A stretch of 64,000 nt of DNA from Macrostomum lignano (lineage: Eukaryota): contig NIVC01002094.1 of NCBI GenBank assembly GCA_002269645.1, positions 124,001-188,000 of the forward strand, read 5' to 3'. The notes beneath the pieces are model-generated. The model was not told the origin of the DNA. It searched no databases and saw nothing but the letters and a program-made list of their open reading frames with translations. Each line of letters begins with the position of its first letter. The stretch's first letter is position 1. Below, in pieces: positions 1-61,589 of this stretch. Both the position numbers and the translations under genes were made by a program.

Positions 1-20
1 TTTTCAAAACCCATCAACCA

Positions 21-3330: not shown

Positions 3331-3571
3331 CGAGAAAGCCGTTTTAATAATAGTTTTATCAAGAGCGGCAATCTCATATATTCTTTAAATTCAAGGTTCA
3401 AATAAAAAATGCCTTAGAAACACAGTTTTATTCAGTCTGTAAGTCATAGGTTATCAACTAATTAGCAGGTGACCGACAGGTGACCAAATTGCAAAGTGAA
3501 TTATTATATTAGTTCCAATTGAATGGGACAAACAAACAAGCAGTGTTCAGAGCTACAGTTGGACAAACTAA

Positions 3572-4109: not shown

Positions 4110-4124
4110 CTGAGACAGGTGCAA

Positions 4125-8450: not shown

Positions 8451-8588
8451 TTAAAAACGAAATTGGGGGATGTTAATTGCAGTGAGGAAATGTACTAACA
8501 TGCAAATAGAACAATTTAAAAATGCACAGGAAAGGTCCGCACAGCTACATATACAATTATTGACAGAGCTGTCAGTCATATTTAGATT

Positions 8589-9122
8589 TTAAGGAAACAG
8601 ATGCCGCCTCTTATTGGGCAACAAAGACTGGCCGTCCCGTCGACTCAGCAACCGTTCAGCCTCTCGAATATGCCTCGGCTGCAGCGGGCCCACATCGCCA
8701 AGTCGCTGGCGAACATTCAGAGCCTCTTCAACAATTTCACCAACGTAGACTTTGGCTATGCCGGCCACGGCTATGACGACATTCTGGGACACCTGGCTGA
8801 CACCCGAGGCCTGCGTGATGAGCCGCTTAACCGAGGCCTTCGCGAAGGCTGCCCGCCTGTACTTCTCAAATCGGTTGAGCTGCTCCTCTGAGAAGTGCGA
8901 GATCAGCGCTTGAAGCCGCTTGCGCTCCTCAGCTTTGGCCTCGTCATCTTCGACTCCCAGCGGCTCCGGCAGGTCCGTCTCCGCGTCCGGCTCGACGTCC
9001 GGCTCCGTGTCCGGCTCTGCGTCTGGAGCCAGATCGGCGCCAGAACCGGACGGCTCTTCGTCAATGGCGCCAGCGTCTGCGGAAGCGGCGGCGGCCGCTG
9101 CTGATCCGGCTAAGTCTGACAT
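8589..9122 (-). CDS. TAF11: TFIID subunit 11 (histone-fold TAF11), single coding exon, 177 aa
   Basis: [60 protein letters not shown] matches the conserved TAFII28 histone fold; the N-terminus is acidic. An acceptor-like TTTGCAG lies 4 nt before the ATG. Confidence 0.93.
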
Positions 9123-9269
9123 TTTGCTGCAAACTCAGCGATAGTGGGGAGGGGGAGCGTTGACTGTAAAATTGAAAACAGATACATGAATTAAAACTAA
9201 CTTTTTTTTACTTTTATGCTTCAGTTAGAAGATTTTTAAATACTTAATGCAAAGCTAATATTCTAACAA

Positions 9270-10010: not shown

Positions 10011-10604
10011 ATGGTAATTGGGGAAGCAAAAGGCAAACATAATGCTTAGTAACTATATGAAAAATAAGATGTACATTTCATGAAAAACACAGAATACGAT
10101 GGCTTTAAGCTGAAAAATAGAAGGCAGCAAGAAGTTGTTGTGTAAGTCAGAATCCAGATATAAAAACATTCAGTCAGAAAAAATACATCTAATTGGCCAA
10201 GTTTGGAAGGCAAATTGTTTGAAAAAGGCATTCCTGATCACATAGCACTGCGCGATAAAAAGCGCGATAAAAATAAAAAAAATCGCCGAAACTTTAATTG
10301 GAAACTACACGAAGGGAATGAGGCTGAGTTTGTGAAGAGTAAAACGGCGCATGCCAAAAATAACTAAAAATAGAGCGTGTACACTGCTGGTACTACTAAC
10401 GAAACTATAATCTATTCATTCATTTAGAGGAAACAAAATTTGGCAAAAATACGAATTGAGAACAGCTGTTGAGCATCAGGGTTGGGAAGAATCGAAATAA
10501 AAAGTCATAATCATAATTTCACTTAAAGCTAGGAATCGCAATTCTTAAACAGCTTAATCCTCATGCTAGGATAAATATAGTTCTTTACGTATGAAACATA
10601 TTTT

Positions 10605-12802: not shown

Positions 12803-13585
12803 TCAGCCCCAGCGCCTCAGACAGAACTTGGCACCGAACCACAGGACCGAACCGGCGACAGCGCAGAAGACGGTGTTCAGTGCGACGCTGCTCACAAAAA
12901 TGGTTCGAGTTCGCTGCTGAAACTCGGCCGCATCGTTAACTCTGGGAAACGGCACCCCGGGCACAGGCACGCCCAGGAACTGGCACAGCGGCTCCCAGCC
13001 TTCGGCCACTCGAAACACCAGCAGACGCTCCTTTGGAATGTTTCGAATAACGTCCTCAACGTGACGATCAAATATCCTGATAAGCTCTTCGTCAGTAGCG
13101 TCGAGGTCAAGTCGCAGTCGCTGATCGAACAGCACCTCCTTCAGCTTGACAATGTAGTACAGTCCAATCAGGTGAAGCAGTGGGGTCAGCACCATCTGGA
13201 TCACCTTGGCTAGTCGCAGAACTGTGCCTCTCATGCTAGTTGCCCATCGTTTAGGATCGCGCACGCTCAGCACAAACCTCGCATCCGGATAGATCCTGGC
13301 CAAGTCTTTGTAGAACAAGCAAGCTGGAAAATCTGCGGTAGCTTGGAAACCGCAGAATATTTTGTCAGCCAATTCTCTGGTCAAGCCGTTAGTTGAGGCC
13401 TGGTACCACAGCTTCAGATGCGAACGATTCTCGTGTAGAATATAGTCCATATGGTAGCACCTGCCACCCAACAGGATCTCGAATGCTTTCATCTGCGAGT
13501 TGGTGCCAGTGCGCATCAGGCCTACACTGATCACCTGAAGATTGCTGCGATCCGCGTCCTCAAACTGACGCCTAGTTGACGTCAT
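12803..13585 (-). CDS. Sulfotransferase (Sulfotransfer_4 / SULT-OR-like) copy 1, tail-anchored
   Basis: Contains GLMRTGTNSQMKAFE..CYHM (5'-PAPS loop), ADFP, VRDPKRW..S (3'-phosphate binding) and RLLVFRVAEGWEPLCQFL, then a C-terminal hydrophobic helix followed by RR. Confidence 0.88.
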   Translation of the reverse strand: MTSTRRQFEDADRSNLQVISVGLMRTGTNSQMKAFEILLGGRCYHMDYILHENRSHLKLWYQASTNGLTRELADKIFCGFQATADFPACLFYKDLARIYPDARFVLSVRDPKRWATSMRGTVLRLAKVIQMVLTPLLHLIGLYYIVKLKEVLFDQRLRLDLDATDEELIRIFDRHVEDVIRNIPKERLLVFRVAEGWEPLCQFLGVPVPGVPFPRVNDAAEFQQRTRTIFVSSVALNTVFCAVAGSVLWFGAKFCLRRWG

Positions 13586-14886
13586 GCTCAGTCAGTTTGA
13601 CTGGATGCGAAATCTGAAAGACAGGTTAAAACAGGTCTGTGATAACACTAGTAGATATTGTTCCTGTTTGGACTATAGCTTGTGTTGTTTTTTTGTTTTA
13701 ATTTGCTGACTTCAACTCGAGTTCTAAGGAGTTGAGAACGGCAGAGTGCTCTCCAGAAATGATGCATTAATTAAAAGTCAAAATGTGAATAACCAAATAA
13801 AGAACAAAACAAGCTATACACATATACAATATTTGAGGTATTTTGTCAACTAGATGAACTTTAAACTTTGCTCAAAGGAGTCGGGTTTGAAGAATTGCCT
13901 CAAGAAGATCGCAAAGGCGGTCATGGGTGCGAGAGCTGGACTCTGGGGGGAGAAAAGTATGGAGACACTCACAGAGTTTGAAATGAAATTTTACAGAAGA
14001 ATGCCCACGGCCATGTCGAAATCTTATAAAATCTTACAACCTTGATAATACAATCGAATGCTCATTCTGTTGAGTTAAAAGCCCCGAATTCGAGCCAACT
14101 ACTCGTAGTTCCGATCGCTAGAGTTTGAACAGTAGTAGTAGTATATTAAGCTTTACACTAGACATTTGTGCACTATGAAAATCAAAATCAAAACCAAAAT
14201 CAATTCAAAATAGTCTCGGAATATTAATAAGTTTATTTATCACAAATACAAGCTTCGTAAAAAAGGTTTATATAAATATATACGCTACTAATTCTATTAA
14301 GTGATTATTTATTTAGTAATAAAATTAATCTGAAAATTTAATAAAAATCCACTATACTAAAAATTATAAATCTAAGTCACAACCCATTGTCCTAGAATGC
14401 TTTAATCAAGATAAATTTGTGATATAAAAAATCGATTGATCACAAAAGACCATTAAAACGTTCTACAGTGAAAGCAACAAGGTGTAAAACTTGGATTCAA
14501 CAATATTGAAAAGTCTCAATCTTTGCGAGTGACGCAACTCAGCTACGCCGCGACAGACTTGCGTTGAGGAATGAAGTGGGGGAGCTGTGTGCGAGGGTTG
14601 GACGGATTACGAGAGCTACCCCAATCAGTTTTCTCGTAGATTTTATTTCAGATTAGTCCAAAGAGAAATTGCACTGGCGCATAGAGTGGCGACTTTTCAA
14701 TGTTGCTGAATCTATTATTTAGAAGGCACCTTGTGATTGTCTAAAACTAAATAAAAAGTTGTAACGCCATATAATTCGATGTCTAATATTGAGAAGACAT
14801 AAAAGTGGTAACTCGGAGATTTCTTCCTGCTTTCCGTTTGATTTTATACTTGGCAGCCTGGAATTGAAACCTACAAGTCAAGAAGA

Positions 14887-15675
14887 CTACAGCTGAAGAC
14901 AGCGCTTTACACTGAACCAGACCGCAGCGCCAACAGCAGTACAGAAGGCCACATTCAGAACTGATCCGAAAAGTATAAATGAACCAATTTTACGTTGAAA
15001 TTCTTTGGTATCATTCACGCACGGGAATGGCACGTCCGGCACCGGTACATTCAAGAATTTGCACAAAGGTTCCCAGCCGTCGGTGACTCTGAACACTAAC
15101 AGGCGCTCCTTAGGAATAGTCCGAATCACGGCTTCAGTGTGCCGATCAAAAGCGACAGCAAGTTCCTGGTCAGACACGCCTGGATTCATTCCCATTCTAG
15201 GGAACATTGCAGTTTGCAATTTGTCCATGTAATTGAAGCCAATTAGCCAGGCTATTGGGGGCAGGATGTGTTTGCCAGCCGATTGAGCCTTGTAAACTGT
15301 AGCCCGGACACTCTGCACCCAGCGTTCGGGCTCGCGCAGGCTAAGAATAAATTTGGCTTCAGGATAAATCTGCATCAACTCCGAATAGAAGTGAGCAGCT
15401 GGAAAGTCTGTGCAAGCTCGAAATTCGCTTAACATTTCGTCTGCGAGTTCTTTTGTGAGACCTTCTGTAGCGGCTTTGAGCCACAGTTTCAAATGATGTC
15501 GCTTCTCCTCTATGATCACTTCCATATGGTAGCAGCGGCCGCCAAGCAGAATCTCTAGCGCCTTCATCTGCGAATTGGTGCCAGTTCGCATCAGGCCAGC
15601 ACCAATCACTATGGGGCCTGTTGAAGTTTTCGATGCCATGCAAAATAGCGTTGAAGGCTTTGAGTTGTTAAACAT
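14887..15675 (-). CDS. Sulfotransferase (SULT-OR-like) copy 2, tail-anchored
   Basis: Same motifs (VIGAGLMRTGTNS, CTDFP, LREPERW, GWEPLCKFL); intronless; hydrophobic C-tail. Confidence 0.88.
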   Translation of the reverse strand: MFNNSKPSTLFCMASKTSTGPIVIGAGLMRTGTNSQMKALEILLGGRCYHMEVIIEEKRHHLKLWLKAATEGLTKELADEMLSEFRACTDFPAAHFYSELMQIYPEAKFILSLREPERWVQSVRATVYKAQSAGKHILPPIAWLIGFNYMDKLQTAMFPRMGMNPGVSDQELAVAFDRHTEAVIRTIPKERLLVFRVTDGWEPLCKFLNVPVPDVPFPCVNDTKEFQRKIGSFILFGSVLNVAFCTAVGAAVWFSVKRCLQL

Positions 15676-15714
15676 GCTCTAGTCCCGTTAGCCAAGGCCA
15701 AGGCTAGCACAAAT

Positions 15715-15890
15715 TAGTGCTGGGGTCCTCAGTGTAGGATGAGGCTAATTGGTGTTGGGGTCCTCAGTGTAGGATGAGGCTAATTGGTGTTGGGGTCCTC
15801 AGTGTAGGATGAGGCTAATTGGTGTTGGGGTCCTCAGTGTAGGATGAGGCTAATTGGTGTTGGGGTCCTCAGTGTAGGATGTGGGTCATT
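15715..15890. repeat. 35-bp tandem repeat, 4-5 copies, just upstream of sulfotransferase copy 2
   Basis: Unit AATTGGTGTTGGGGTCCTCAGTGTAGGATGAGGCT. Confidence 0.9.
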
Positions 15891-16882
15891 AGTGTAGACT
15901 GTGGGCGCTTGCAAATTTCTTAACTACCCTAAAAGAAACAAAATTTAACAAGTTTAAAAAAGACTGCAAATAAATATAATAAATAGTTTAATGTATTGAA
16001 CAGAGTGTCTATCTGTGTTAAAACGGACGCTAAAAAACTCTCTGAGTTAAACGGCATCATTCAAACAAAATTGCTAAAATCAGTTAACCATGCATAAAAA
16101 TAAGCTCACTCCATCGAACGAATTTAAAACAATTTGCTAAATAAATAAATATATAGAAGTTTGTGCGAGTCTAATATAGAAGCAATGATAAAAAACAGAC
16201 TACAGACGAGAGTCTAAAAATCTTGTTAAACTTTAGCACAAGGACTACTCAAGCAAGGAATAGCAATTCTCTGTTGTCAGGACCAAAAAAATCATGAATT
16301 CCACCTCTCTACAAAATTCCAAAATTATATAAAAACTTGGCATATGTAGCAGATAATTTATTTGATTCATTAAATAGCCAATTAATTTGCAAACTCTAAT
16401 TCATGGTCTGAGTCCAAATCGACAAAAAAAATTGTCAGATTGGCGTACTATAAACGTAGAGTCGAGACACCCAAATCTAGGTAATTTTCTTTGAGCTTTA
16501 ATGGAATATCAGACTAGCTTTGATAATTCTGTTATTTTGTTAAATCACCTTGACAATGAAACTGTGACCTGGAGTCATTTCATAGCACAATCTTTCTAAC
16601 TTGTTTGTGCGATTGTCATCAAATGTAATCAACCAAACGCATATGAATCCTCTTATGTACATATTCAATAACTCCACGACTCAAACTCTTCTCTTCTAGT
16701 ATCACATAGTTTTTATCCGACTGTACCGACACGTTATCAATGGTAGTCAAAAAAGTCAAAAATCAAAGTCTACCCAGATGGCGAAACAACCTCGGACCCA
16801 GCGCAGGTTGGTTTCAAATCAAATCGTCTACAAGTCCAGAAGTTGAGGACGGAAACTTCAGATAAATCGGAAGCCGCTTAAC

Positions 16883-17671
16883 TTAAAAATACTTTCTCAG
16901 GCAGTATTTGGCCCCAAACCAAGCAGCAGAGCCGACAGCGGCATAAAAGCCGGCATTGAGTACAACGCCAGCAACTCGAACAATCTGAGTCCTGCGTCGG
17001 AACTGCTTCGTGTCGTTCACATTCGGAAACGGCACATCCGGCACGGGCAAGCCTAAAAACTTGCACAATGGTTCCCAACCGTCAGACACTTGAAATACCA
17101 ACAGTCTGTCCTTAGGAATTGTCTGCTTGACAGCTTCAACGTGTCATTCGTACGCAGCGATCATCTCTTGCTCGGACATGTCAAACCGGAAGCCCAGACG
17201 CTGCTCAAGGATCAAGTCAATGACAGGTACAGAGGAAGACATGCCTAGGAGCCAATCTACTGGTTTCGGAATCTTCAGCTGTACACTTCTCAGCTCGGCA
17301 ATGGTGCTGCGAACGCTTACAACCCAACGTTTGGGATCTCGAATGCTGAGTACAAACTTTGCGTTGGGATAAATCTTCATCAATTCTGGATAGAAGTGAG
17401 CAGCTGGAAAGTCTGTCGAAGCTCGAAAATCGCCCAGAATCTTTTCAGCAAGCTCTTTGGTTAAACCACCCTTGGCGGCCTGGTACCAAAGCTTCAGATC
17501 ATTTCTTCGCTCTTTCGCAATCACCTCCATATGGTAGCAGCGGCCGCCAAGCAGAATCTCCAGCGCCTTCATCTGCGAATTGGTGCCAGTTCGCATTAGG
17601 CCGGCGCCAATCACTACGGGGCCTGAGGCAGCCTGCTCCTGCGGTGCGCCAGCTCGAAGCATATTAGACAT
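16883..17671 (-). pseudogene. Sulfotransferase copy 3 with an in-frame nonsense codon (TGA at 17144-17146)
   Basis: The reading YE*HVEAVKQTIPKDRLLVFQVSDGWEPL continues in frame to a normal tail anchor. All paralogues have Arg (xRH) at this position, consistent with CGA>TGA. It could be a null allele or a base error. Confidence 0.8.
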
Positions 17672-18777
17672 TCCAATCGAATCAGGAATGCAGTCAAATT
17701 TAGCCAAATAACCGTTGTGACAAAAAATACCGTTCTATAAATAATAAGTTTCAGTCCTTTTAGAAAACAAGTGTTTCCATCCGGGTACTTCTTATTTTAT
17801 TAATTATCAAGTGCTTCACAGGTGCCTAATGTCTGCGCATAGGGCAAGGACTACTCAAATAGGACAGGAAACAACGTTTTCCTGGAAAATTTCCGAAGGC
17901 AGATTTTTCAGAAAAAAATGCATTACGAAGATAAGAGGTTTTCATTTTTTCAGCACAAGAATCGTTATTGCTTTTGATATGTTGTGCCTTTATTATATGT
18001 CTATTGATAGTCAATTTAAAGCCTTTTTTAAGAAAATTATGATTCCATGTTAATTTTTTATTTTACGTACATTCTATATATTAAGAATGAAAAAATGCAT
18101 GGCACAGCTCGGCTCATTGGTTTTATCAATCTATTTTAACATCTCTGTTACACATTGTTACAGTCAGCTAAGAATGACAAGTACGCTTTCTTATTTTTAG
18201 GAACTGGATGGACATGTAATTAGGCTAAAAATTAACATAGAACCTTAATCTCCTTAACTAAAAGCTTTATGAATACCAATAGAGCTATAAGAAAGGCAAA
18301 GCATATCAAAAGATGAACACTGGGCCTGCCTACTATCAAAAGCAATAACACAATTTTTACGCTAGAAAACGTCAAACCCTTACCTATAACTGTAATATAT
18401 TTTGGTCGGTAACTGGTCGGTAATATTATATTATATTATATATAATGGTCAGTTACCGACACACTTATTGGGCTTTAACTTAGTGCAAAAAAGAGAAAGA
18501 AAACGCCTAATGTGACAAAGTTATGAAAGGCAAATTTATTGAAATTGTAATAAAACTCGCAACAGGTCAGCTGTGCAAATAATTTTCGCTAGTTGTAAAA
18601 TTTCGTTACATAATCTAAAATTGTTGTGAAATTTGTTAAAATTAAACAAAATGAAAAGCGTTCAAATAAAACTACAAGAAAACTTTTTAAGAGAGTTCTT
18701 TTCAACCGTAAGTTTCGAAATCTATACTTTTAGCAATGTAAAATCACATTTATTGAGAGTTAATAAATTAGCTTAAG

Positions 18778-21700
18778 AAGCCTTCTATTGTATCGGTCAA
18801 GCAAACCTACGCAGACAGCACTTCACACCGAACCAGCAGCCTTCTATTGTATAGGTCAGGCAAACCTACGCAGACAGCACTTCACACCGAACCAGCAGCC
18901 TTCTATTGTATAGGTCAAGCAAACCTACGCAGACAGCACTTCAGACCAAACCAGCAGCCTTCTATTGTATAGGTCAAGCAAACCTACGCAGACAGCACTT
19001 CAGACCAAACCAGCAGCCTTCTATTGTATAGGTCAAGCAAACCTACGCAGACAGCACTTCACACCGAACCAGCAGCCTTCTATTGTATAGGTCAAGCAAA
19101 CCTACGCAGACAGCACTTCAGACCAAACCAGCAGCCTTCTATTGTATCGGTCAAGCAAACCTACGCAGACAGCACTTCAGACCAAACCAGCAGCCTTCTA
19201 TTGTATCGGTCAAGCAAACCTACGCAGACAGCACTTCAGACCGAACCAGCAGCCTTCTATTGTATAGGTCAAGCAAACCTACGCAGACAGCACTTCACAC
19301 CGAACCAGCAGCCTTCTATTGTATAGGTCAGGCAAACCTACGCAGACAGCACTTCACACCGAACCAGCAGCCTTCTATTGTATAGGTCAGGCAAACCTAC
19401 GCAGACAGCACTTCAGACCAAACCAGCAGCCTTCTATTGTATAGGTCAAGCAAACCTACGCAGACAGCACTTCACACCGAACCAGCAGCCTTCTATTGTA
19501 TAGGTCAAGCAAACCTACGCAGACAGCACTTCAGACCAAACCAGCAGCCTTCTATTGTATAGGTCAAGCAAACCTACGCAGACAGCACTTCAGACCAAAC
19601 CAGCAGCCTTCTATTGTATAGGTCAAGCAAACCTACGCAGACAGCACTTCAGACCAAACCAGCAGCCTTCTATTGTATAGGTCAAGCAAACCTACGCAGA
19701 CAGCACTTCAGACCAAACCAGCAGCCTTCATATTGTATCGGTCAAGCAAACCTACGCAGACAGCACTTCACACCGAACCAGCAGCCTTCTATTGTATAGG
19801 TCAAGCAAACCTACGCAGACAGCACTTCAGACCAAACAAGCAGCCTTCTATTGTATAGGTCAAGCAAACCTACGCAGACAGCACTTCAGACCAAACCAGC
19901 AGCCTTCTATTGTATAGGTCAGGCAAACCTACGCAGACAGCACTTCACACCGAACCAGCAGCCTTCTATTGTATAGGTCAGGCAAACCTACGCAGACAGC
20001 ACTTCAGACCAAACCAGCAGCCTTCTATTGTATAGGTCAAGCAAACCTACGCAGACAGCACTTCACACCGAACCAGCAGCCTTCTATTGTATAGGTCAAG
20101 CAAACCTACGCAGACAGCACTTCAGACCAAACCAGCAGCCTTCTATTGTATAGGTCAAGCAAACCTACGCAGACAGCACTTCAGACCAAACCAGCAGCCT
20201 TCTATTGTATAGGTCAAGCAAACCTACGCAGACAGCACTTCAGACCAAACCAGCAGCCTTCTATTGTATAGGTCAAGCAAACCTACGCAGACAGCACTTC
20301 AGACCAAACCAGCAGCCTTCATATTGTATCGGTCAAGCAAACCTACGCAGACAGCACTTCACACCGAACCAGCAGCCTTCTATTGTATAGGTCAAGCAAA
20401 CCTACGCAGACAGCACTTCAGACCAAACCAGCAGCCTTCTATTGTATAGGTCAAGCAAACCTACGCAGACAGCACTTCAGACCAAACCAGCAGCCTTCTA
20501 TTGTATAGGTCAGGCAAACCTACGCAGACAGCACTTCACACCGAACCAGCAGCCTTCTATTGTATAGGTCAGGCAAACCTACGCAGACAGCACTTCAGAC
20601 CAAACCAGCAGCCTTCTATTGTATAGGTCAAGCAAACCTACGCAGACAGCACTTCAGACCAAACCAGCAGCCTTCTATTGTATAGGTCAAGCAAACCTAC
20701 GCAGACAGCACTTCAGACCAAACCAGCAGCCTTCTATTGTATAGGTCAAGCAAACCTACGCAGACAGCACTTCAGACCAAACCAGCAGCCTTCTATTGTA
20801 TAGGTCAAGCAAACCTACGCAGACAGCACTTCAGACCAAACCAGCAGCCTTCATATTGTATCGGTCAAGCAAACCTACGCAGACAGCACTTCACACCGAA
20901 CCAGCAGCCTTCTATTGTATAGGTCAAGCAAACCTACGCAGACAGCACTTCAGACCAAACCAGCAGCCTTCTATTGTATAGGTCAAGCAAACCTACGCAG
21001 ACAGCACTTCAGACCAAACCAGCAGCCTTCTATTGTATAGGTCAAGCAAACCTACGCAGACAGCACTTCACACCGAACCAGCAGCCTTCTATTGTATAGG
21101 TCAAGCAAACCTACGCAGACAGCACTTCACACCGAACCAGCAGCCTTCTATTGTATAGGTCAAGCAAACCTACGCAGACAGCACTTCAGACCAAACCAGC
21201 AGCCTTCTATTGTATAGGTCAAGCAAACCTACGCAGACAGCACTTCACACCGAACCAGCAGCCTTCTATTGTATAGGTCAAGCAAACCTACGCAGACAGC
21301 ACTTCACACCGAACCAGCAGCCTTCTATTGTATCGGTCAAGCAAACCTACGCAGACAGCACTTCAGACCGAACCAGCAGCCTTCTATTGTATAGGTCAGG
21401 CAAACCTACGCAGACAGCACTTCAGACCGAACCAGCAGCCTTCTATTGTATAGGTCAGGCAAACCTACGCAGACAGCACTTCAGACCAAACCAGCAGCCT
21501 TCTATTGTATAGGTCAAGCAAACCTACGCAGACAGCACTTCAGACCAAACCAGCAGCCTTCTATTGTATAGGTCAAGCAAACCTACGCAGACAGCACTTC
21601 AGACCGAACCAGCAGCCTTCTATTGTATAGGTCAAGCAAACCTACGCAGACAGCACTTCAGACCAAACCAGCAGCCTTCTATTGTATAGGTCAAGCAAAC

Positions 21701-21848
21701 CTACGCAGACAGCACTTCAGACCAAACCAGCAGCCTTCTATTGTATAGGTCAAGCAAACCTACGCAGACAGCACTTCAGACCGAACCAGCAGCATTCATA
21801 TTGTATCGGTCAAGCAAATCTACGCAGACAGCACTTCAGACCAAACCA
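18778..21848. repeat. 59-bp minisatellite, about 52 copies, derived from the 3' end of sulfotransferase copy 4
   Basis: The minus-strand unit reads TGG TTT GGT CTG AAG TGC TGT CTG CGT AGG TTT GCT TGA plus about 20 nt, i.e. WFGLKCCLRRFA*. The last unit is the gene's own C-terminus. Confidence 0.95.
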
Positions 21849-22586
21849 GACAGCAAGGCCCACAGCCGAGCAGAAGCCGAAATTAGCAAGAGCACTAATT
21901 GTGTAAAAGCCAATGGCTTTCTTCTGAAATTCAGCAGTATCATTCACATTTGGAAACGGTACATCGGGTACCGGCAGCTCCAGGAAGTTGCACAATGGTT
22001 CCCAACCATCCGAAACTCGAAACACTAACAGTCGCTCTTTGGGAATAGTTCGAATCACCGCCTCGGTGTGACGGTTAAACGCTTCAATCAATTCTTTGTC
22101 TGTCATGTCCACTCGAATACCCAATCGCGAGTCGAAGATGTTGTGATGCAACGGCAGAAAGTAGGTCAGATTGAGAAGCCACAACGATGGGGCCAGCATA
22201 CAACCCATAGCCTTCATACCCTTAAAGATGGTACTGCGAACGCTCTCAACCCATCGTTGGGGATCGCGAACGCTCAGCACAAACTTGGCATTGGGATAAA
22301 TCTTGAGTAGCTCAGGATAGAAAGCCGCTACAGGAAAGTCTGTTGTAGCAACAAAACCGTCAAAGATTTGGTCAGCCAGCTGTTTTGTTAAACCCTCTTT
22401 GGCAGCCTGATTCCACAGCTTCAAGTGGTGTCGCTTCTGTTTCATGATTACGAACATATGGTAGCACCGGCCGCCAAGCAGAATCTCCAGCGCCTTCATC
22501 TGCGAGTTGGTGCCAGTTCGCATCAGGCCAACACCAAACACCAATGGACCCGTAGTGGACTGTTGCAACTTGCTATCAAGAGACAT
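21810..22586 (-). CDS. Sulfotransferase (SULT-OR-like) copy 4, tail-anchored, 258 aa
   Basis: The first in-frame ATG is at 22586 (MSLDSKLQQSTTGPLVFGVGLMRTGTNS); the ORF track's start at 22688 is a non-ATG codon. All motifs are present. Confidence 0.88.
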   Translation of the reverse strand: MSLDSKLQQSTTGPLVFGVGLMRTGTNSQMKALEILLGGRCYHMFVIMKQKRHHLKLWNQAAKEGLTKQLADQIFDGFVATTDFPVAAFYPELLKIYPNAKFVLSVRDPQRWVESVRSTIFKGMKAMGCMLAPSLWLLNLTYFLPLHHNIFDSRLGIRVDMTDKELIEAFNRHTEAVIRTIPKERLLVFRVSDGWEPLCNFLELPVPDVPFPNVNDTAEFQKKAIGFYTISALANFGFCSAVGLAVWFGLKCCLRRFA

Positions 22587-23677
22587 TGCGCTTGCTTGCG
22601 ATTCAGTTGATGTTAAACAATAAAAAACGATAGCAGAAATAATTGCGCAAAGGTTACGCTTAGCTCTGAGGCACTGTGGTGGTCGCAACTCACACCCACG
22701 GATACTAGAATAACTAGACTAGATGGGCCACTCAGCAAATTTGCGTGTAAGCTACTTTCAGTTCAGTAGCAAGTTACAGGGAAGAATTTTAATGTATTTT
22801 AAAAGACAAGGTTTATTTATTGTCTCTTACACCCCCAAGCTTAAACCCTCAAACTCCACACGGAACCTCTACCCCCGTCCCACCGCCCAATTTTTATTAC
22901 CCTACTCGGTTGTTCCAATCTAAAGCTGCCATGTACATATCAGTGGACTGGCTAATGTACATTATGGCTGAACCAATTAGCAAGCTGTTTACGCCTGCAA
23001 GCTTGGGCTTCTAAACTTATCGAAGTCATTTCAGCTGCCATTATTTTTATAAAATAACGTACGTATTCTTTATTGCTACTGAACTGAAAGTAGAAAGCTG
23101 TTTTACCAAGTATATATGACTGAGTGGCCCATTTAGTTATTCTAGTATCTGTGCTCACACCCAAAAAATTAATTTTCAACTTTTGGAGATAAAAACGTTC
23201 AAGTACGAATGCACTCGTACCAGACTTTTCAAAATCCATTTTTACTTTTATGAAGATTCTAAGATATACAGCTACATTTGAGCTGGGTGACGAACTTGCT
23301 TAAACCCTCGTAACTAACCAAGGCCAACTGTGCTTAACTTAATTCGCTAACACATGGAGGAACAAAACTTCAATGCAAAATGAGTGCTAGCTTGAAAAAA
23401 ATTAGCAAAGAAATAACAAACAGACTAAAGATACACGTTTTATTAGTTTCCATTAGTAACTAGAAATAAAATGGACACGCTGTACTTTTTTTGCAAATTG
23501 TAAACTAAAATAATAACAGTATAGAATGGTATAATACCGTGACTAGGTATAGCAATGGAAATGAATAAATATTAACATATCTAGTGATAAAGAAATGCGC
23601 TAATTATATTGTGGTTTCTTTAAAATAGATTGTAACTATTCAGATTTTTACCGCGTAAAGTATTATTGGTTATTGGG

Positions 23678-24815
23678 ATATTCCTGAAGGATGGTTTATG
23701 GGATATTCCTGAAGGATGGTTTATGGGAGAATCCTGAAGGATGGTTTATGGGAGATTTTTGAAGGATGGTTTATGGGAGAATCCTGAAGGATGGTTTATG
23801 GGAGAATCCTAAAGGATGGTTTATGGGAGAATCCTGAAGGATGGTTTATGGGAGATTTTTGAAGGATGGTTTATGGGATATTCCTGAAGGATGGTTTATG
23901 GGAGATTTTTGAAGGATGATTTATGGGAGAATCCTGAAGGATGGTTTATGGGAGATTTTTGAAGGATGGTTTATGGGAGAATCCTGAAGGATGGTTTATG
24001 GGAGATTTTTGAAGGATGGTTTATGGGAGAATCCTGAAGGATGGTTTATGGGAGATTTTTGAAGGATGGTTTATGGGAGAATCCTGAAGGATGATTTATG
24101 GGAGAATCCTGAAGGATTGTTTATGGGAGATTTTTGAAGGATGATTTATGGGAGAATCCTGAAGGATGATTTATGGGAGAATCCTGAAGGATGGTTTATG
24201 GGAGATTTTTGAAGGATGGTTTATGGGAGAATCCTGAAGGATGATTTATGGGAGAATCCTGAAGGATTGTTTATGGGAGATTTTTGAAAAATGATTTATG
24301 GGAGAATCCTGAAGGATGGTTTATGGGAGAATCCTGAAGGATGGTTTATGGGAGATTTTTGAAGGATGGTTTATGGGAGAATCCTGAAGGATGGTTTATG
24401 GGAGATTTTTGAAGGATGATTTATGGGAGAATCCTGAAGGATGGTTTATGGGAGATTTTTGAAGGATGGTTTATGGGATATTCCTGAAGGATGGTTTATG
24501 GGAGATTTTTGAAGGATGATTTATGGGAGAATCCTGAAGGATGGTTTATGGGAGATTTTTGAAGGATGGTTTATGGGAGAATCCTAAAGGATGGTTTATG
24601 GGAGAATCCTGAAGGATGGTTTATGGGAGATTTTTGAAGGATGGTTTATGGGAGAATCCTGAAGGATTGTTTATGGGAGATTTTTGAAGGATGGTTTATG
24701 GGAGAATCCTAAAGGATGGTTTATGGGAGAATCCTGAAGGATGGTTTATGGGAGATTTTTGAAGGATGGTTTATGGGAGAATCCTGAAGGATGGTTTATG
24801 GGAGAATCATGAAGG
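23678..24815. repeat. 25-bp minisatellite (GAAGGATGGTTTATGGGAGAATCCT / ..GAGATTTTT)n
   Basis: Two alternating unit variants read directly. Confidence 0.95.
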
Positions 24816-24909
24816 ATGACTTATAGTAGATTCTTAAGCCGACAAAGCCAAAAAGAGAGGCAATGCACTTAAGTCGTGAACTTATTGATAAAAAAATATT
24901 TTGCAACTG

Positions 24910-25689
24910 TCAACCAAACCGACGCAGAGCGAACTTCAACCCGAACCAGACAATCGCCCCAGCAACCGAGCAGACAGCCAAATTAGTAGTGACACTGGCC
25001 ATATCGATGAAGTGAGCAAAGAACACAAACTCATTAGTGTCTTTAATATGTGGAAACGGTCGATCGGGCACAGGTACACCCAGGTAGCTGCACAGAGGCT
25101 CCCAACCATCGGTGACTCGATAGATCAACAGTCGATCTTTAGGAATCGTTCTTTGTACAGCTTCAGCATGCCGTTCAAAAGCAGCGGTCATCTCCTCTTC
25201 AGTCATGTCAAAATTAAACACGAATCTAGATTGAAATATAGCATCGTGTAACAGTTGGAAGTAGCTGAGATCCCACAGCCACCGAGTCAAAGGTAACATC
25301 CGGCCCACAGCTCGATAGACACGACCAATAGTGAGTTTCATGCTATTCGACCAACGCTTGGGATCGCGAAGGCTTAAAATGAACTTCGCCTCGGGATAAA
25401 TCTGCGCCAACTCGGCGTAAAACATTGCCGTAGGAAAATCTGCTGCCGCAACAAAACCGTCAAATATTTGATCGGCTAGTTCTTTAGTCAGGCCCTGAGT
25501 AGCGGCTTTGTGCCACAGTTTGAAATGATCCCGCCTCTCAGACATTATCACCTGCATGTGATAGCAACGACCGTTTAGAAGTCTCTCCAAGGCTTTCATC
25601 TGCGAATTGGTGCCAGTTCGCATCAGGCCTGTGCATATCACTTTTGGCCCACCCTGCGACTGCTCACTTTGAGTATCCGGTTCTGTCAT
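24910..25689 (-). CDS. Sulfotransferase (SULT-OR-like) copy 5, tail-anchored
   Basis: Contains GLMRTGTNSQMKALE, AADFP, LRDPKRW and GWEPLCSYL, and a hydrophobic C-tail followed by RR. Confidence 0.88.
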   Translation of the reverse strand: MTEPDTQSEQSQGGPKVICTGLMRTGTNSQMKALERLLNGRCYHMQVIMSERRDHFKLWHKAATQGLTKELADQIFDGFVAAADFPTAMFYAELAQIYPEAKFILSLRDPKRWSNSMKLTIGRVYRAVGRMLPLTRWLWDLSYFQLLHDAIFQSRFVFNFDMTEEEMTAAFERHAEAVQRTIPKDRLLIYRVTDGWEPLCSYLGVPVPDRPFPHIKDTNEFVFFAHFIDMASVTTNLAVCSVAGAIVWFGLKFALRRFG

Positions 25690-25879
25690 GAGTAGTTTCG
25701 ATTTTTTTATTGCTGGTCTGCTTTTGATTTGCTGAAATAGAGGTTTATATATTGTTTAGGGAATTTTGTGAAGAAACAAAAAAGACCATCCTTTATGAAC
25801 AAAAATAAATGGTAATTAGACTCTTGTGGGAAATTAGACGATACTTTTGAGGGAAATAAGAGACTCTTTATGGCGAATT

Positions 25880-26610
25880 AGAGGACACTATTGAGGGGAG
25901 TTAGAGGAGACTCTTGAAGGGAATTAGAGGAGACTCTTGAGGGGAATTAGAGGAGACTCTTGAAGGGAATTAGAGGAGACTCTTGAGGAGAATTAGAGGA
26001 CACTATTGATGGGAATTAGAGGAGACTCTTGAGGAGAATTAGAGGACACTATTGATGGGAATTAGAGGAGACTCTTGAGAGGAATTAGAGGAGACTCTTG
26101 AGGGGAATTAGAGGAGACTCTTAAGGAGAATTAGATGAGAATCTTGAGGGGAATTAGAGGAGACTCTTGAGGAGAATTAGAGGACACCATTGAGGGGAAT
26201 TAGAGGAGACTCTTGGGAGGAATTAGAGGAGACTCTTGAGGGGAATTAGAGGAGACTCTTAAGGAGAATTAGATGAGAATCTTGAGGGGAATTAGAGGAG
26301 ACTCTTGATGGGAATTAGAAGAATCTCTTGAGGGGAATTAGAGGACACTATTTAGGGGAATTAGAGGAGACTCTTGAGGGGAATTAGAGGACACTATTGA
26401 TGGGAATTAGAGGAGACTCTTGAGGGGAATTAGAGGACACTATTGATGGGAATTAGAGGAGACTCTTGAGGGGAATTAGAGGAGAATCTTGAGAGGAATT
26501 AGACGGCACTATTTAGGGGAATTAGAGGAGACTCTTGAGGGAAATTAGGAAACTTTCAAGGAGAATTAGAGGAGGCTCTTAAATGAATTAGAGACACTAG
26601 AGAGGAATTA
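25880..26610. repeat. 23-bp minisatellite (GAGGGGAATTAGAGGAGACTCTT)n
   Basis: Tandem units read directly. Confidence 0.92.
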
Positions 26611-26828
26611 TGAATGTCCATCGATGGAAATCAGAGGATTGACATAGTGAAAATACTAAAATAATGTTTACAATAATAAAGCTCATATGTTATCGACGTG
26701 ATAAAGGCTGTTGAAAAATTATTTATTCAAAAAAATAATCAGTTAAGATTTTAAAACTCCTATCAATAACTATAAAAAATGAATAATTATTGCATTGAGT
26801 TAATTGCACAAAAATTCAATTGAGATTG

Positions 26829-27623
26829 CTAGCTCTGAGCACAGGTAGAGGACCGCAGCAAGTATTTAACACCAACCCAGACACCTCCAAAGACAGCTGA
26901 ACAAACTGCTAAATTAAGCAGAGGCCCGACAATCTTGAGCCCGACAATTGTTTCTAAGAATCGTTTCGTATCGTTCAGATGAGGAAACGGTTCGTTCGAA
27001 GGCACGGGCAGCTCCAGGAACTTACACAACGGTTCCCAACCGTCTGACACTCGAAATATCAACAGTCTCTCCTTCGGTATGGTTCGAATCACTGTCTCAT
27101 TGTGACGGTTGAATGCTTCGATCATTTCCGCATCAGACATGTCAAAATTGAAGCCCAAACGAGAGCCCAGCACAGCGTCACTCAGAGGCAAGTAGTGAGA
27201 CAGCCCCAGAAGCCATCGCACTGGCGGTAGCATGTACTCAACTGTCAATTTAGACTGCAGAATGGTAGCCCGGACACTTCTCACCCAATCAATTGGATCG
27301 CGAATGCTCAGTACAAACTTGGCGTCAGGATAAATCTGCATCAATTCTTTGTAGAAATGAGCAGCTGGAAAGTCTGTACAAGCCAGAAAGTCGTCAAATA
27401 TTTCCTCAGCCAATTCTTTGCTCAAGCCTTGGATAGCAGCTCGATGCCACAGCTGCAGATGTGACAGCTTCTCTTCCATCACAATGTCCATATGATAGCA
27501 GCGGCCGCCAAGCAGCATCTCCAGCGCCTTCATCTGCGAATTGGTGCCAGTTCGCATCAGGCCAGCGCCAATCACACGAAGACCAGCTGAAGATTTGTTT
27601 TTCCTACTAGCAGCAGAAGACAT
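26829..27623 (-). CDS. Sulfotransferase (SULT-OR-like) copy 6, tail-anchored
   Basis: Contains VIGAGLMRTGTNSQMKALE, CTDFP, IRDPIDW and GWEPLCKFL, and a hydrophobic C-tail. Confidence 0.88.
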   Translation of the reverse strand: MSSAASRKNKSSAGLRVIGAGLMRTGTNSQMKALEMLLGGRCYHMDIVMEEKLSHLQLWHRAAIQGLSKELAEEIFDDFLACTDFPAAHFYKELMQIYPDAKFVLSIRDPIDWVRSVRATILQSKLTVEYMLPPVRWLLGLSHYLPLSDAVLGSRLGFNFDMSDAEMIEAFNRHNETVIRTIPKERLLIFRVSDGWEPLCKFLELPVPSNEPFPHLNDTKRFLETIVGLKIVGPLLNLAVCSAVFGGVWVGVKYLLRSSTCAQS

Positions 27624-29324: not shown

Positions 29325-32300
29325 TCAGTGCCGACCAGAAGCGGCTGCAGACTGGCTGCTTCCGGTTTTGGTGCTATTTTTAGCAGCAAATTCGGCCATT
29401 CTCCGCTCCAGTTCCGGCCGGAAGTGCCGGATGAGGCCCTGGGCTGGCCAAGCGGCTCCGTCCCCAAGGGCGCAGATTGTGTGGCCTTCAATCTGCTTGG
29501 ACACCTCCCACAGCAGGTCGATCTCCTCCGGGCGGGCGTCCCCGGTGACAAAGCGATTGGTTAATCGCATCATCCAGCCGGTGCCCTCCCGGCAGGGTGT
29601 GCATTGGCCGCAGCTCTCGTGCTTGTAGAAGTCCATCAGGCGGGCGATGCATTTCACAACATCAGCCTGCTTGTTCATCACGATTAGGGCGGCTGTGCCT
29701 GCGGGGGGGGGCAGTTCACGTTGGTTAGGATTAGGGATAATTTTACAATGATGATTAGTGACGATTCTTAGGGTGGATTAGTGACGATTCTTAGGGTGGA
29801 TTAGTGACGATTCTTAGGGTGGATTAGTGACGATTCTTAGGTGGATTAGTGACGATTCTTAGGGTGGATTAGTGACGATTCTTAGGGTGGATTAGTGACG
29901 ATTCTTATGGTGGATTAGTGACGATTCTTATGGTGGATTAGTGACGATTCTTATAAGGGGTGGATTAGTGACGATTCTTATAAGGGGTGGATTAGTGACG
30001 ATTCTTATAAAAGGCGGATTAACAACAATCCCGAGAGGTGGATTAACGACAATCCTGAGAAGCGGATTAACGACAATCCTGAGTGGCGGATTAACGACAA
30101 TCCTGAGGCGGATTGGCGACAATCCTGAGAGGCGCCTCAAAGACGCACCAATGCACCGTGAACGTGAACTCACCCAGAGCAGTCTGAGCCTGAACCAGCG
30201 AGTCGAAGTCCATCAGCACAGTGTCGCACACATTCTTAGGAATCAGCGGAGTGGAGCTGCCGCCCGGGATCACGGCCAGCAGGTTGTCCCAGCCGCCAAT
30301 GACGCCACCGGCGTGCCGCTCGATCAGCTCCTTCATGGTGATGGACATCTCCTCCTCCACTGTGCAGGGATTGTTGACGTGCCCGGAGATGTTGAACAGT
30401 TTCGTGCCGCGATTGCGATCCCGACCGAAGCTGGCGAACCAGGCGCCCCCGCGTCGGCAGACGGTCGGCGCCGCGGCGATGGTCTCGACGTTGTTTACCG
30501 TGGTCGGACAGCCGAACACGCCGACATCGGCTGGAAACGGCGGCTTCAGACGCGGCTTGCCGGCTTTGCCTTCCAGAGATTCAATCAGCGAAGTCTCCTC
30601 GCCGCAGATGTAGGCGCCGGCGCCGCGGTGCACGTAGATGTCGTAGTCATAGCCGCTGCCGCAGGCGTTCTTGCCGAGGAAGCCGGCGTCGTAGGCTTCG
30701 TTGATGGCGGCCTGGGGAAAAGGTTGAGACGGAAGGGTTGATCACTCTATCAATTCGTCTATTGATCACTCTATCAATTCGTCTATTGATCACTCTATCA
30801 ATTCGTCTATTGATCACTCTATCAATTCGTCTATTGATCACTCTATCAATTCGTCTATTGATCACTCTATCAATTCGTCTATTGATCAATCTATCAATTC
30901 GTCTATTGATCACTCTATCAATTCGTCTATTAATCACTCTATCAATTCGTCTATTGATCAATCTATCAATTCGTCTATTGATCACTCTATCAATTCATCT
31001 ATTGATCAATCTATCAATTCGTCTATTGATCACTCTATCAATTCATCCATTCATCAATCTATCAATTCATCTATTGATCAATCTATCAATCAATTCGTCT
31101 ATAAATCAATCTATCAATTCGTCTATTGATCACTTTATCAATTCATCCATTCATCAATCTATCAATTCATCTATTGATCAATCTATCAATCAATTCGTCT
31201 ATAAATCAATCTATCAATTCGTCTATTGATCACTCCATCAATTCGTCTATTGATCAATCTATCAATTCGTCTATTAATAAATCTATCAATTCATCTATTT
31301 ATCAATCTATCAATTCATCTATTGATCAATCTATCAATTCATCTATTTATCACTCTATCAATTCGTCTATTGATCACTCTATCAATTCGTCTATTGATCA
31401 CTCTATCAATTCGTCTATTGATCAATCTATCAATTCGTCTATTGATCACTCTATCAATTCATCTATTGATCAATCTATCAATTCGTCTATTGATCACTCT
31501 ATCAATTCGTCTATTGATCACTCTATCAATTCGTCTATTGATCACTCTATCAATTCGTCTATTGATCACTCTATCAATTCGTCTATTGATCACTCTATTA
31601 ATTCGTCTATTGATCACTCTATCAATTCGTCTATTGATCACTCTATCAATTCGTCTATTGATCACTCTATTAATTCGTTTATTGATCACTCTATCAATTC
31701 GTCTATTGATCACTCTATCAATTCGTCTATTGATCAATCTATCAATTCGTCTATTGATCAATCTATCAATTCGTCTATTGATCACTCTATCAATTCGTCT
31801 ATTGATCACTCTATCAATTCGTCTATTGATCACTCTATCAATTCGTCTATTGATCAATCTATCAATTCGTCTATGGATCACTCTATCAATTCGTCTATTG
31901 ATCAATCTATCAATTCGTCTATTGATCAATCTATCAATTCGTCTATTGATCACTCTATTAATTCGTCTATTGATCACTCTATCAATTCGTCTATTGATCA
32001 CTCTATCAATTCGTCTATTGATCACTCTATCAATTCGTCTATTGATCACTCTATCAATTCGTCTATTGATCACTCTATCAATTCGTCTATTGATCACTCT
32101 ATCAATTCGTCTATTGATCACTCTATCAATTAGTCTATTGATCACTCTATCAATTCGTCTATTGATCACTCTATTAATTCGTCTATTGATCACTCTATCA
32201 ATTCGTCTATTGATCAATCTATCAATTCGTCTATTGATCAATCTATCAATTCGTCTATTGATCACTCTATCAATTCGTCTATTGATCAATCTATCAATTC

Positions 32301-53515: not shown

Positions 53516-61541
<8,026 letters not shown>

Positions 61542-61589
61542 GTAAGCTGGCCTGGCCCTCTCCACCTTGCCCTCTACCTTCTCCGCCTT

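What the first reader, a model, noticed from the sequence alone, without database searches (positions are those of the whole stretch)
12803..27623. Tandem array of six intronless SULT-OR-like sulfotransferases
Seen: six same-strand paralogues of about 260 aa in 15 kb. All have G-L-M-R-T-G-T-N-S-Q-M, CYHM, a conserved Asp (xDFP), RDP..W..S and GWEPLC.FL. Established: this motif set matches the Sulfotransfer_4-type fold of the Schistosoma enzyme SULT-OR that activates oxamniquine (its loop, as recalled, reads GLPRTGTKSLK), not the classical cytosolic SULT1/2 family. Inference: this is a local expansion of a detoxification or small-molecule/lipid sulfation system with an unusual invariant N-S-Q-M loop. 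Its natural substrates are unknown.
Basis: partly seen in the sequence, partly recalled or inferred. Interest (0 to 1): 0.75.

Follow-up and report, generated by a model that had tools for sequence, protein, structure and literature searches.

The report
Flatworm tandem array of SULT-OR-type sulfotransferases
A free-living flatworm (Macrostomum lignano) carries six intron-free, side-by-side genes, one broken by a stop codon, for the enzyme family that activates the drug oxamniquine in schistosomes; this is an ordinary new member of a known family, notable only for a membrane-anchor tail and an altered cofactor loop.

Summary
Six minus-strand paralogues of 258-264 codons lie at 12803-27623, and all match Pfam Sulfotransfer_4 (PF17784) over its full length (E 1e-36 to 1e-64). 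Their best solved relatives are the schistosome sulfotransferases, including SmSULT-OR (4MUA), and bacterial Cpz8 and SgdX2.

Corrections:
- Copy 3 has an in-frame TGA at codon 176, so there are five intact genes plus one null copy.
- Two of the "all have" motifs have single-residue exceptions.

The window is Macrostomum lignano contig NIVC01002094.1. A duplicate contig carries the same array with seven copies. The cofactor loop (R-T-G-T-x-S), the R-[DE]-P-x-x-W-x-x-S motif and the catalytic Asp (SmSULT D91) are invariant. The segment that forms the drug pocket in SmSULT is the most variable.

Unlike the schistosome enzymes, every copy ends in an uncharged 19-21-residue hydrophobic helix followed by basic residues, which looks like a tail anchor. 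The loop changes G to M and K to M at normally conserved positions.

The copies are old (48-61% identity, synonymous sites saturated) and under purifying selection. They form one clade (100/100 bootstraps), so this expansion is separate from the known seven-gene S. mansoni SULT-OR locus.

Verdict: a real but ordinary new member of a known kind. Substrates are unknown.

The parts
12803..13585 (-). c1, intact 260-aa Sulfotransfer_4 gene with a C-terminal hydrophobic tail
   Evidence: PF17784 E 8.6e-61, profile positions 1-215. 98.5% identical to GenBank BOX15_Mlig032859g2 on the sister contig. dN/dS against the sister copy is 0.15.
14887..15675 (-). c2, intact 262-aa gene (R-E-P variant of the 3'-phosphate motif)
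   Evidence: PF17784 E 1.5e-63. PDB hits 9kf1, 5tiv and 4mua at E 1e-33 to 1e-36. AlphaFold2 model pLDDT 93.8 with a C-terminal helix at 223-261.
16883..17671 (-). c3, full-length copy interrupted by an in-frame TGA at 17146-17144 (codon 176); a null allele or young pseudogene
   Evidence: The sister contig has CGA (Arg) at that codon but loses homology and its ATG upstream of codon 17. dN/dS over the shared 246 codons is 0.12. No gene is called on either contig.
21810..22586 (-). c4, intact 258-aa gene
   Evidence: PF17784 E 7.9e-64. Identical to P0002 and to the c4a copy on the sister contig.
24910..25689 (-). c5, intact 259-aa gene (GWEPLCSYL variant)
   Evidence: PF17784 E 3.2e-62. 99.2% identical to BOX15_Mlig019790g2. 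dN/dS 0.12.
26829..27623 (-). c6, intact 264-aa gene
   Evidence: PF17784 E 4.4e-61. 98.5% identical to BOX15_Mlig019790g1. dN/dS 0.17.
18779..21854 (.). 59-bp minisatellite (52 units) downstream of c4 and overlapping its last ~45 nt. Each unit repeats about 40 nt of the c4 3' end (WFGLKCCLRRFA*) plus about 20 nt of flank.
   Evidence: TRF and direct comparison: 30 exact copies of a 33-nt string that differs from the c4 CDS end by one base. The same array follows both c4 copies on the sister contig.
8589..9122 (-). Flanking eukaryotic gene TAF11 (TAFII28 domain), downstream of c1
   Evidence: PF04719 E 5e-33. Same neighbour on both contigs.
29325..30633 (-). Flanking NDUFV1 (complex I 51 kDa) exons, upstream of c6
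   Evidence: ORF translations. Called gene with PF01512 and PF10589 at the same relative place on the sister contig.

Best explanation
This is a lineage-specific tandem family of PAPS-dependent small-molecule O-sulfotransferases of the Sulfotransfer_4 / SULT-OR type in the flatworm Macrostomum lignano. There are five intact genes and one copy with a fresh nonsense codon. Shown here: family membership, the fold, and conservation of the catalytic and cofactor residues. Inferred mechanism: the loop G-L-M-R-T-G-T-N-S holds the 5'-phosphosulfate of PAPS. Arg114 and Ser122 (c2 numbering, R-[DE]-P-x-x-W-x-x-S) hold the 3'-phosphate. The invariant Asp90, equivalent to the catalytic D91 of SmSULT, deprotonates the acceptor hydroxyl. 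The acceptor pocket is built from helices that are the least conserved part among the paralogues, so the copies probably act on different acceptors, as a small phase-II-like battery. An uncharged 19-21-residue C-terminal helix followed by K/R residues, with no N-terminal signal, probably tail-anchors each enzyme. That would put the catalytic domain in the cytosol, where PAPS is made, and favour lipophilic, membrane-partitioned substrates. The array arose by old duplications within the Macrostomum lineage and is kept by purifying selection.
For: Pfam PF17784 full length, E 1e-61 to 1e-64 for the five intact copies and 1.3e-35 for the truncated c3 ORF. PDB sequence hits to SmSULT-OR, ShSULT, SjSULT, Cpz8 and SgdX2. 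AlphaFold2 pLDDT 93.8 and Foldseek top hits to the same structures, followed by TPST and heparan sulfotransferases. R30, T31, T33, D90, W119 and S122 are invariant in 115 homologues and in all six copies. Mapping onto SmSULT numbering: R17, T18, G19, T20, S22, C35, D91, R115, W120, S123 and P225 are all conserved. D91 is called catalytic in PMC7167500 and PMC8193065. Mean pairwise identity among paralogues is 0.82-0.94 across the loop/CYHM block but about 0.30 across c2 residues 121-170, which align with the SmSULT 127-157 drug-contact region. Contact positions F39, I42, T157, L236 and T237 differ between copies. Tail: Eisenberg mean hydrophobicity 0.64-0.71, hydrophobic moment 0.05-0.15, no charged residue in the best segment in five copies (one Lys in c5), and 4-13 basic-rich residues after it. 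It is modelled as a continuous helix. Similar tails occur in most close homologues but not in Schistosoma. Selection: dN/dS against the duplicate contig is 0-0.41; among paralogues pS is 0.60-0.83 (saturated) and dN 0.30-0.46. Macrostomum clade monophyly 100/100. Eukaryotic context: NDUFV1 and TAF11 flank the array on a 205-kb contig.
Against: No biochemical or expression data were available. Exact-protein look-ups that might have found transcript assemblies returned nothing. The Lys conserved in 83% of the family (SmSULT K24) is Met here, and the loop Gly (84%) is Met; I could not establish what those residues do, so altered cofactor handling is possible. The tail is only moderately hydrophobic and no localisation was tested. 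Alignment in the variable lid region is uncertain, so residue-by-residue pocket mapping there is approximate. The natural substrate is unknown even for SmSULT-OR (PMC7405262).
Confidence: 0.75

Rival explanations
1. The proteins are 'activating' sulfotransferases in an endogenous biosynthetic pathway. The sulfate would be installed as a leaving group or a transferable donor rather than for detoxification or solubilisation.
For: The closest solved non-schistosome relatives are Cpz8 from caprazamycin biosynthesis (TM 0.90 on the target) and SgdX2, deposited as a 'bacterial activating sulfotransferase'. SULT-OR itself activates oxamniquine by making an unstable sulfate ester (PMC4618941).
Against: No biosynthetic partner genes lie in the array; the flanks are NDUFV1 and TAF11. 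Six diverged paralogues with a variable pocket fit a broad-acceptor battery better than one pathway step.
Confidence: 0.12
2. The proteins are mainly structural or regulatory membrane or lipid-droplet proteins, like the Aspergillus oryzae Sulfotransfer_4 proteins LdrG and LdrH. Sulfotransfer would be secondary or lost.
For: LdrG and LdrH carry PF17784, sit on ER and lipid droplets, and affect droplet number and size (bioRxiv 10.1101/2022.11.24.517872). The copies here have a hydrophobic tail, and the conserved Lys is replaced by Met.
Against: Every residue known or expected to be needed for catalysis and PAPS binding is invariant in all copies despite saturated synonymous divergence. LdrG binds through amphipathic helices, whereas the tail here has a very low hydrophobic moment.
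Confidence: 0.08
3. The array is decaying or unexpressed duplicated DNA, or a bacterial contaminant or recent horizontal transfer, suggested by the lack of introns and the many bacterial homologues.
For: The copies have no introns in a genome averaging about 5 introns per gene (PMC5730564). c3 carries a nonsense codon, and its sister copy lacks a start. Many homologues at about 40% identity are bacterial.
Against: dN/dS is 0-0.41 between duplicate contigs and about 0.2 among paralogues. The array is embedded between intron-bearing animal genes on two contigs of 205 and 281 kb. The intergenic minisatellites are of the tandem-repeat kind that is abundant in this genome. The nearest named relatives are trematode proteins.
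Confidence: 0.05

Closest known systems
Schistosoma mansoni SULT-OR (Smp_089320; PDB 4MUA/4MUB) and its six paralogues on chromosome 6
   Same: Same Pfam family and fold. Same R-T-G-T-x-S loop, catalytic Asp, R-D-x-x-x-W-x-x-S and GWEPLC motifs. It also lies in a multi-copy locus in a flatworm (PMC7405262), and its natural substrate is also unknown.
   Different: About 32-33% identity over the structural alignment. The Macrostomum copies form their own clade, so they are not orthologues of SULT-OR. SULT-OR has two coding exons, whereas these have one. SULT-OR is soluble with a polar C-terminus, whereas these have a hydrophobic tail. The loop reads P16/L23/K24 in SmSULT and M/Q/M here. The host is free-living, not parasitic.
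Tail-bearing Sulfotransfer_4 proteins of other trematodes (Paragonimus, Clonorchis, Fasciolopsis) and of protists and bacteria
   Same: Domain followed by about 35-45 residues containing a hydrophobic C-terminal helix. 35-42% identity to c2.
   Different: They keep the family-typical G and K in the loop (G-[FLI]-G-R-T-G-T-x-S-L-K). None is characterised.
Bacterial Cpz8 (9KF1/9KF2) and SgdX2 (8Y9P)
   Same: Best structural superposition of the core (TM 0.89-0.90 on the target, rmsd 2.1-2.5 A, 34-37% identity). Cpz8 was crystallised in complex with PAP (9KF2).
   Different: Soluble enzymes of natural-product gene clusters, not in tandem arrays, and without a tail.
Aspergillus oryzae LdrG/LdrH
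   Same: PF17784 proteins associated with the ER and lipid-droplet surface.
   Different: They bind through amphipathic helices, and their catalytic activity has not been examined. Their relation to the present clade was not tested here.

Membership tests
Pfam PF17784 Sulfotransfer_4 (SULT-OR-type sulfotransferases) | Profile HMM match above the gathering score over the whole domain | tested here: met
   205.9-215.9 bits against a cutoff of 22.8, profile positions 1-215, for the five intact copies; 123.6 bits for the truncated c3 ORF.
Pfam PF17784 Sulfotransfer_4 (SULT-OR-type sulfotransferases) | 5'-phosphosulfate loop G-x-x-R-T-G-T-x-S | tested here: met
   G-L-M-R-T-G-T-N-S in all six copies. 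R, T and T are invariant in 115 homologues.
Pfam PF17784 Sulfotransfer_4 (SULT-OR-type sulfotransferases) | 3'-phosphate motif R-[DE]-x-x-x-W-x-x-S | tested here: met
   Present in all six (c2 has R-E-P). W and S are invariant in the family.
Pfam PF17784 Sulfotransfer_4 (SULT-OR-type sulfotransferases) | Catalytic Asp equivalent to SmSULT D91 / ShSULT D100 / SjSULT D87 | tested here: met
   D90 (c2 numbering) aligns with D91. It is invariant in all six copies and in the 118 database homologues of that alignment. Its catalytic role is stated in PMC7167500 and PMC8193065.
Pfam PF17784 Sulfotransfer_4 (SULT-OR-type sulfotransferases) | Fold of the solved family members | tested here: met
   Model pLDDT 93.8. 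Foldseek E 4e-17 to 5e-15 against 5TIV, 4MUA, 9KF1 and 8Y9P; the next best hits are TPST at about 1e-4.
Pfam PF17784 Sulfotransfer_4 (SULT-OR-type sulfotransferases) | Loop-helix Lys (SmSULT K24; K in 83% of homologues) | tested here: not met
   Met in all six copies and Gln in the nearest unnamed relatives. This residue is not universal in the family (Q 10%, R 4%), so it does not exclude membership.
Pfam PF17784 Sulfotransfer_4 (SULT-OR-type sulfotransferases) | PAPS binding and sulfotransfer activity | not testable with these tools
   Needs recombinant protein.
Orthologue of SULT-OR itself (oxamniquine-activating enzyme) | Groups with Schistosoma SULT-OR inside the trematode clade | tested here: not met
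   Macrostomum copies are monophyletic 100/100 and trematodes 82/100. A joint flatworm clade has only 24/100 support.
Orthologue of SULT-OR itself (oxamniquine-activating enzyme) | Conserved oxamniquine-contact residues (P16, F39, I42, L92, V127, D144, T157, M233, L236, T237) | tested here: not met
   Most differ, and they vary between copies: P16 to M; F39 to D/E/E/F/Q/D; T157 to K/Q/I/H/H/S; the D144 region is gapped.
Classical cytosolic SULT1/2 (PF00685 Sulfotransfer_1) | HMM match | tested here: not met
   No PF00685 hit at E<=0.01. There are only sub-threshold or marginal PF13469 hits.
Tail-anchored membrane proteins | Single hydrophobic helix within about 30-40 residues of the C-terminus, no N-terminal signal or anchor | tested here: met
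   A 19-21-residue best segment, uncharged in five copies (one Lys in c5), mean hydrophobicity 0.64-0.71, moment <=0.15, followed by 4-13 residues rich in K/R. The N-termini are polar. The tail is helical in the model.
Tail-anchored membrane proteins | Post-translational membrane insertion and localisation | not testable with these tools
   Needs a localisation experiment.

The most novel reading that the evidence does not exclude
The Macrostomum enzymes may represent the ancestral flatworm state of the SULT-OR family: cytosol-facing, tail-anchored membrane sulfotransferases. This topology differs from both soluble cytosolic SULTs and Golgi type-II sulfotransferases. Their re-wired cofactor loop (Gly to Met, Lys to Met) would act on membrane lipids or lipophilic dietary toxins. 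The soluble schistosome SULT-OR would then be a derived form that lost the anchor.
Probability: 0.3. Interest if true: 0.5.

Novelty: new member of a known kind. Interest (0 to 1): 0.3.

Why it matters
The natural role of SULT-OR, the enzyme behind oxamniquine action and resistance, is still unknown (PMC7405262). A free-living flatworm with established transgenesis (PMC5730564) that has its own five- to seven-gene array of the family offers a harmless model for asking what these enzymes do, where they sit in the cell and which acceptors they take. The tail anchor and the loop variant are concrete, testable differences. Otherwise this is an expected gene-family expansion. The proteins are already in GenBank as hypothetical proteins.

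Tried and rejected
- Exact-sequence look-ups of c1 and c6, aimed at finding transcript assemblies as evidence of expression, returned nothing.
- The nearest non-Macrostomum relatives (P0007, P0008 and P0010) were not identified. P0007 and P0008 come from the Logan sample DRR639838 of unknown organism; P0010 was not looked up.
- A flatworm-wide clade joining Macrostomum and trematodes appears in the NJ tree but has only 24/100 bootstrap support. I therefore do not claim vertical inheritance from a common flatworm array.
- Valentim 2013 and Taylor 2017 are not in the held library, so the role of SmSULT K24 could not be checked.
- No paper mentions the Mlig gene identifiers, and no relevant paper links Macrostomum with sulfotransferases.
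- Rfam found nothing in the window.
- No TATA or poly(A) pattern is shared among the copies' flanks.
- My first residue mapping with mafft --keeplength dropped six SmSULT residues and shifted the numbering. I redid it correctly.
- Contamination or horizontal transfer was considered and rejected on context and selection evidence.
- I considered that the spliced leader's terminal ATG could rescue the sister-contig c3, which has an in-frame AG upstream of codon 17. This was not tested, and the leader sequence comes from my memory only.


Full report
**What is there**

The minus strand of 12803-27623 carries six paralogous ORFs:

| Copy | Coordinates | Length |
|---|---|---|
| c1 | 12803-13585 | 260 aa |
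| c2 | 14887-15675 | 262 aa |
| c3 | 16883-17671 | 262 codons |
| c4 | 21810-22586 | 258 aa from the first ATG |
| c5 | 24910-25689 | 259 aa |
| c6 | 26829-27623 | 264 aa |

- tblastn with all six proteins finds no seventh copy in the window.
- Each copy is a single ORF spanning Pfam PF17784 (Sulfotransfer_4) positions 1-215. Scores are 206-216 bits against a cutoff of 22.8. The coding regions therefore have no introns, and the pattern is far beyond chance.
- c3 is not intact. It has an in-frame TGA at 17146-17144 (codon 176), where the other copies have the Arg of F-[DNE]-R-H.
c2 has R-E-P instead of R-D-P, and c5 has GWEPLCSYL instead of GWEPLC.FL.

**Whose genome**

- The copies match GenBank proteins of Macrostomum lignano (BOX15_Mlig019790g1, BOX15_Mlig019790g2 and BOX15_Mlig032859g2) at 98-99% identity.
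- The c2 product is encoded on contig NIVC01002094.1 (205 kb) of assembly GCA_002269645.1, which is the window's source.
- A second contig, NIVC01001483.1 (281 kb), carries the same array between the same neighbours: NDUFV1 upstream of c6 and TAF11 downstream of c1.
- This redundancy is expected. [quoted passage not shown]
- The host is therefore a free-living flatworm, in the same phylum as Schistosoma.

**Family and fold**

- phmmer against PDB sequences gives E 1e-33 to 1e-36 to Streptomyces Cpz8 (9KF1), SgdX2 (8Y9P), the S. haematobium and S. japonicum sulfotransferases, and SmSULT-OR (4MUA).
- An AlphaFold2 model of c2, built on a 120-sequence alignment, has mean pLDDT 93.8.
- Foldseek places the same structures on top (E 4e-17 to 5e-15). 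Tyrosylprotein and heparan sulfotransferases follow at about 1e-4, and P-loop kinases only at about 1e-2.
- No copy hits the classical PF00685 family.

**Catalytic and cofactor residues**

- In an alignment with 115 homologues, R30, T31, T33, D90, W119, S122, W201, P203, L204 and C205 (c2 numbering) are invariant. The same residues are present in all six window copies.
- I took the SmSULT sequence from the PDB alignment and checked its numbering against 23 published residue identities.
- Conserved SmSULT positions are R17, T18, G19, T20, S22, C35 (site of the C35R resistance mutation), D91, R115, W120, S123 and P225.
- D91 is the catalytic aspartate (PMC7167500, PMC8193065). It hydrogen-bonds the acceptor hydroxyl (PMC4618941).
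- The proteins therefore have what the family needs for PAPS-dependent O-sulfonation. Activity itself is inferred, not shown.

**What is unusual**

1. The cofactor loop.
   - The family consensus is G-[FL]-G-R-T-G-T-x-S-L-K. The Macrostomum copies read G-L-M-R-T-G-T-N-S-Q-M-K.
   - N and S are common. The rare residues are M29 (Gly in 84% of homologues; aligned with the oxamniquine contact P16 of SmSULT), Q36 (Leu in 70%) and M37 (Lys in 83%).
   - The nearest unnamed relatives (P0007, P0008 and P0010; the first two traced to Logan sample DRR639838) share G-L-M-R-T-G-T-N-S but continue with L-Q-[LV].
   - I could not find what the Lys does in the solved structures.
2. The C-terminal tail.
   - After the domain, each copy has 40-46 more residues. 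They include a 19-21-residue best hydrophobic segment, uncharged in five copies (c5 has one Lys).
   - Eisenberg mean hydrophobicity is 0.64-0.71 and the hydrophobic moment is 0.05-0.15, so the segment is not amphipathic.
   - It is followed by 4-13 residues rich in K/R. The N-termini are polar.
   - The model makes residues 223-261 one helix.
   - This is the signature of a tail-anchored protein with a cytosolic catalytic domain.
   - Such tails are common among the closer homologues, including Paragonimus, Clonorchis and Fasciolopsis. The three Schistosoma proteins examined lack them.
   - Membrane association of the family has a precedent in the Aspergillus oryzae proteins LdrG and LdrH, although those bind by amphipathic helices.

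**Evolution**

- The paralogues are 48-61% identical.
- Synonymous sites are saturated (pS 0.60-0.83) and dN is 0.30-0.46, so the duplications are old.
- Against the duplicate contig, dN/dS is 0.15 (c1), 0.41 (c2), 0 and 0.24 (the two c4 copies), 0.12 (c5) and 0.17 (c6). This is purifying selection.
- Conservation is uneven. Mean pairwise identity is 0.82-0.94 over the loop/CYHM block and about 0.8 over GWEPLC. It falls to about 0.30 over c2 residues 121-170 and 219-248.
- The first variable block aligns with SmSULT residues 127-157, which line the drug pocket. Mapped contact positions differ among copies. This supports divergence in acceptor specificity, but it is an inference, and the alignment there is uncertain.
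- In NJ trees the Macrostomum copies are monophyletic in 100/100 bootstraps and the trematodes in 82/100. A joint flatworm clade has only 24/100 support.
- The expansion is therefore independent of the one in trematodes.

**The c3 copy**

- The window has TGA where the sister contig has CGA.
- The sister copy loses homology, and any in-frame ATG, just upstream of codon 17.
- Neither copy is called as a gene.
- Over the shared 246 codons there are 7 synonymous and 3 non-synonymous differences plus the nonsense change, giving dN/dS 0.12.
- The lesion is therefore recent, a segregating null allele, or an assembly error.

**Comparison with what is known**

- S. mansoni SULT-OR lies in a multi-copy locus with six paralogues. 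It has two coding exons, belongs to a family expanded in trematodes, and has no known natural function. Its planarian homologue is an intestinal marker (PMC7405262).
- The present array is the same kind of thing in a free-living flatworm. It is not orthologous to SULT-OR, has no coding introns (the genome averages about 5 introns per gene), and has a tail and a modified loop.
- The proteins are already deposited as hypothetical proteins.
- No relevant paper in the searchable library links Macrostomum with sulfotransferases, and none mentions the Mlig gene identifiers.

**Verdict**

This is a real, functional-looking, lineage-specific expansion of a known enzyme family, so I rate it a new member of a known kind with modest interest. 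The tail anchor and the loop variant are the parts worth an experiment.

Noticed in passing
window 18779-21854 (also L001 15053-16723 and 19319-20801; L002 1730-3563): The 59-bp minisatellite downstream of c4 is built from the gene's own 3' end. Each unit repeats about 40 nt encoding WFGLKCCLRRFA-stop (one base different from the true CDS end) plus about 20 nt of flank, 52 times here.
   Followed up: yes
L001 14321-15097 and 18587-19363 (sister contig NIVC01001483.1): The duplicate contig has seven copies. c4 together with its minisatellite is duplicated as a unit of about 4.27 kb (c4a 100% and c4b 96.9% identical to the window's c4). This may be copy-number variation between the duplicated genome blocks or an assembly difference.
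   Followed up: partly
window 17144-17146; L002 about 4200-4251: c3 is damaged differently on the two contigs: a nonsense codon here, and loss of the 5' end and ATG there. An AG lies just upstream of codon 17 on the sister contig, so a spliced leader ending in ATG might supply an in-frame start. This was not tested.
   Followed up: partly
L002 7895-8692: On the sister contig the c2 stop codon reads as Trp (the C-terminus reads ...CLQLW), and the called gene ends a few codons further on.
   Followed up: no
window 22587-22688: The c4 ORF continues in frame upstream of its first ATG and encodes a hydrophobic stretch (LCAIISAIVFYCLTS), but there is no ATG. This may be chance or an unrecognised 5' exon or trans-spliced start.
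   Followed up: no
window 36958-41014, minus strand: Exons of a lipoxygenase gene (PLAT domain at 39806-41014; Lipoxygenase domain at 38157-38993 and 36958-38034) lie about 10 kb upstream of the array, beyond NDUFV1. No functional link to the sulfotransferases was tested.
   Followed up: no
window 43807-45084, plus strand: Two adjacent ORFs have weak matches to P-element / THAP9-like transposase domains (Tnp_P_element HTH and TNP-like RNase H N-terminal). This is probably a decayed transposon.
   Followed up: no
window 8000-12618, 15712-15895, 23667-24818, 25818-26580, 29753-32000: Nearly every intergenic space in and around the array is filled with 20-35-bp minisatellites, which create long spurious ORFs on both strands. 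Several share a GGGATTCT(A/T)AGAAT core. Simple and tandem repeats make up 15% of this genome.
   Followed up: partly
window 1-6000 and 59000-62300: These are GC-rich stretches with strong strand skew (GC skew up to 0.54) and overlapping long ORFs. One has a weak mitochondrial ribosomal L35 match (3572-5341, minus strand) and another a weak Cys-loop receptor ligand-binding-domain match (59729-61222, plus strand).
   Followed up: no
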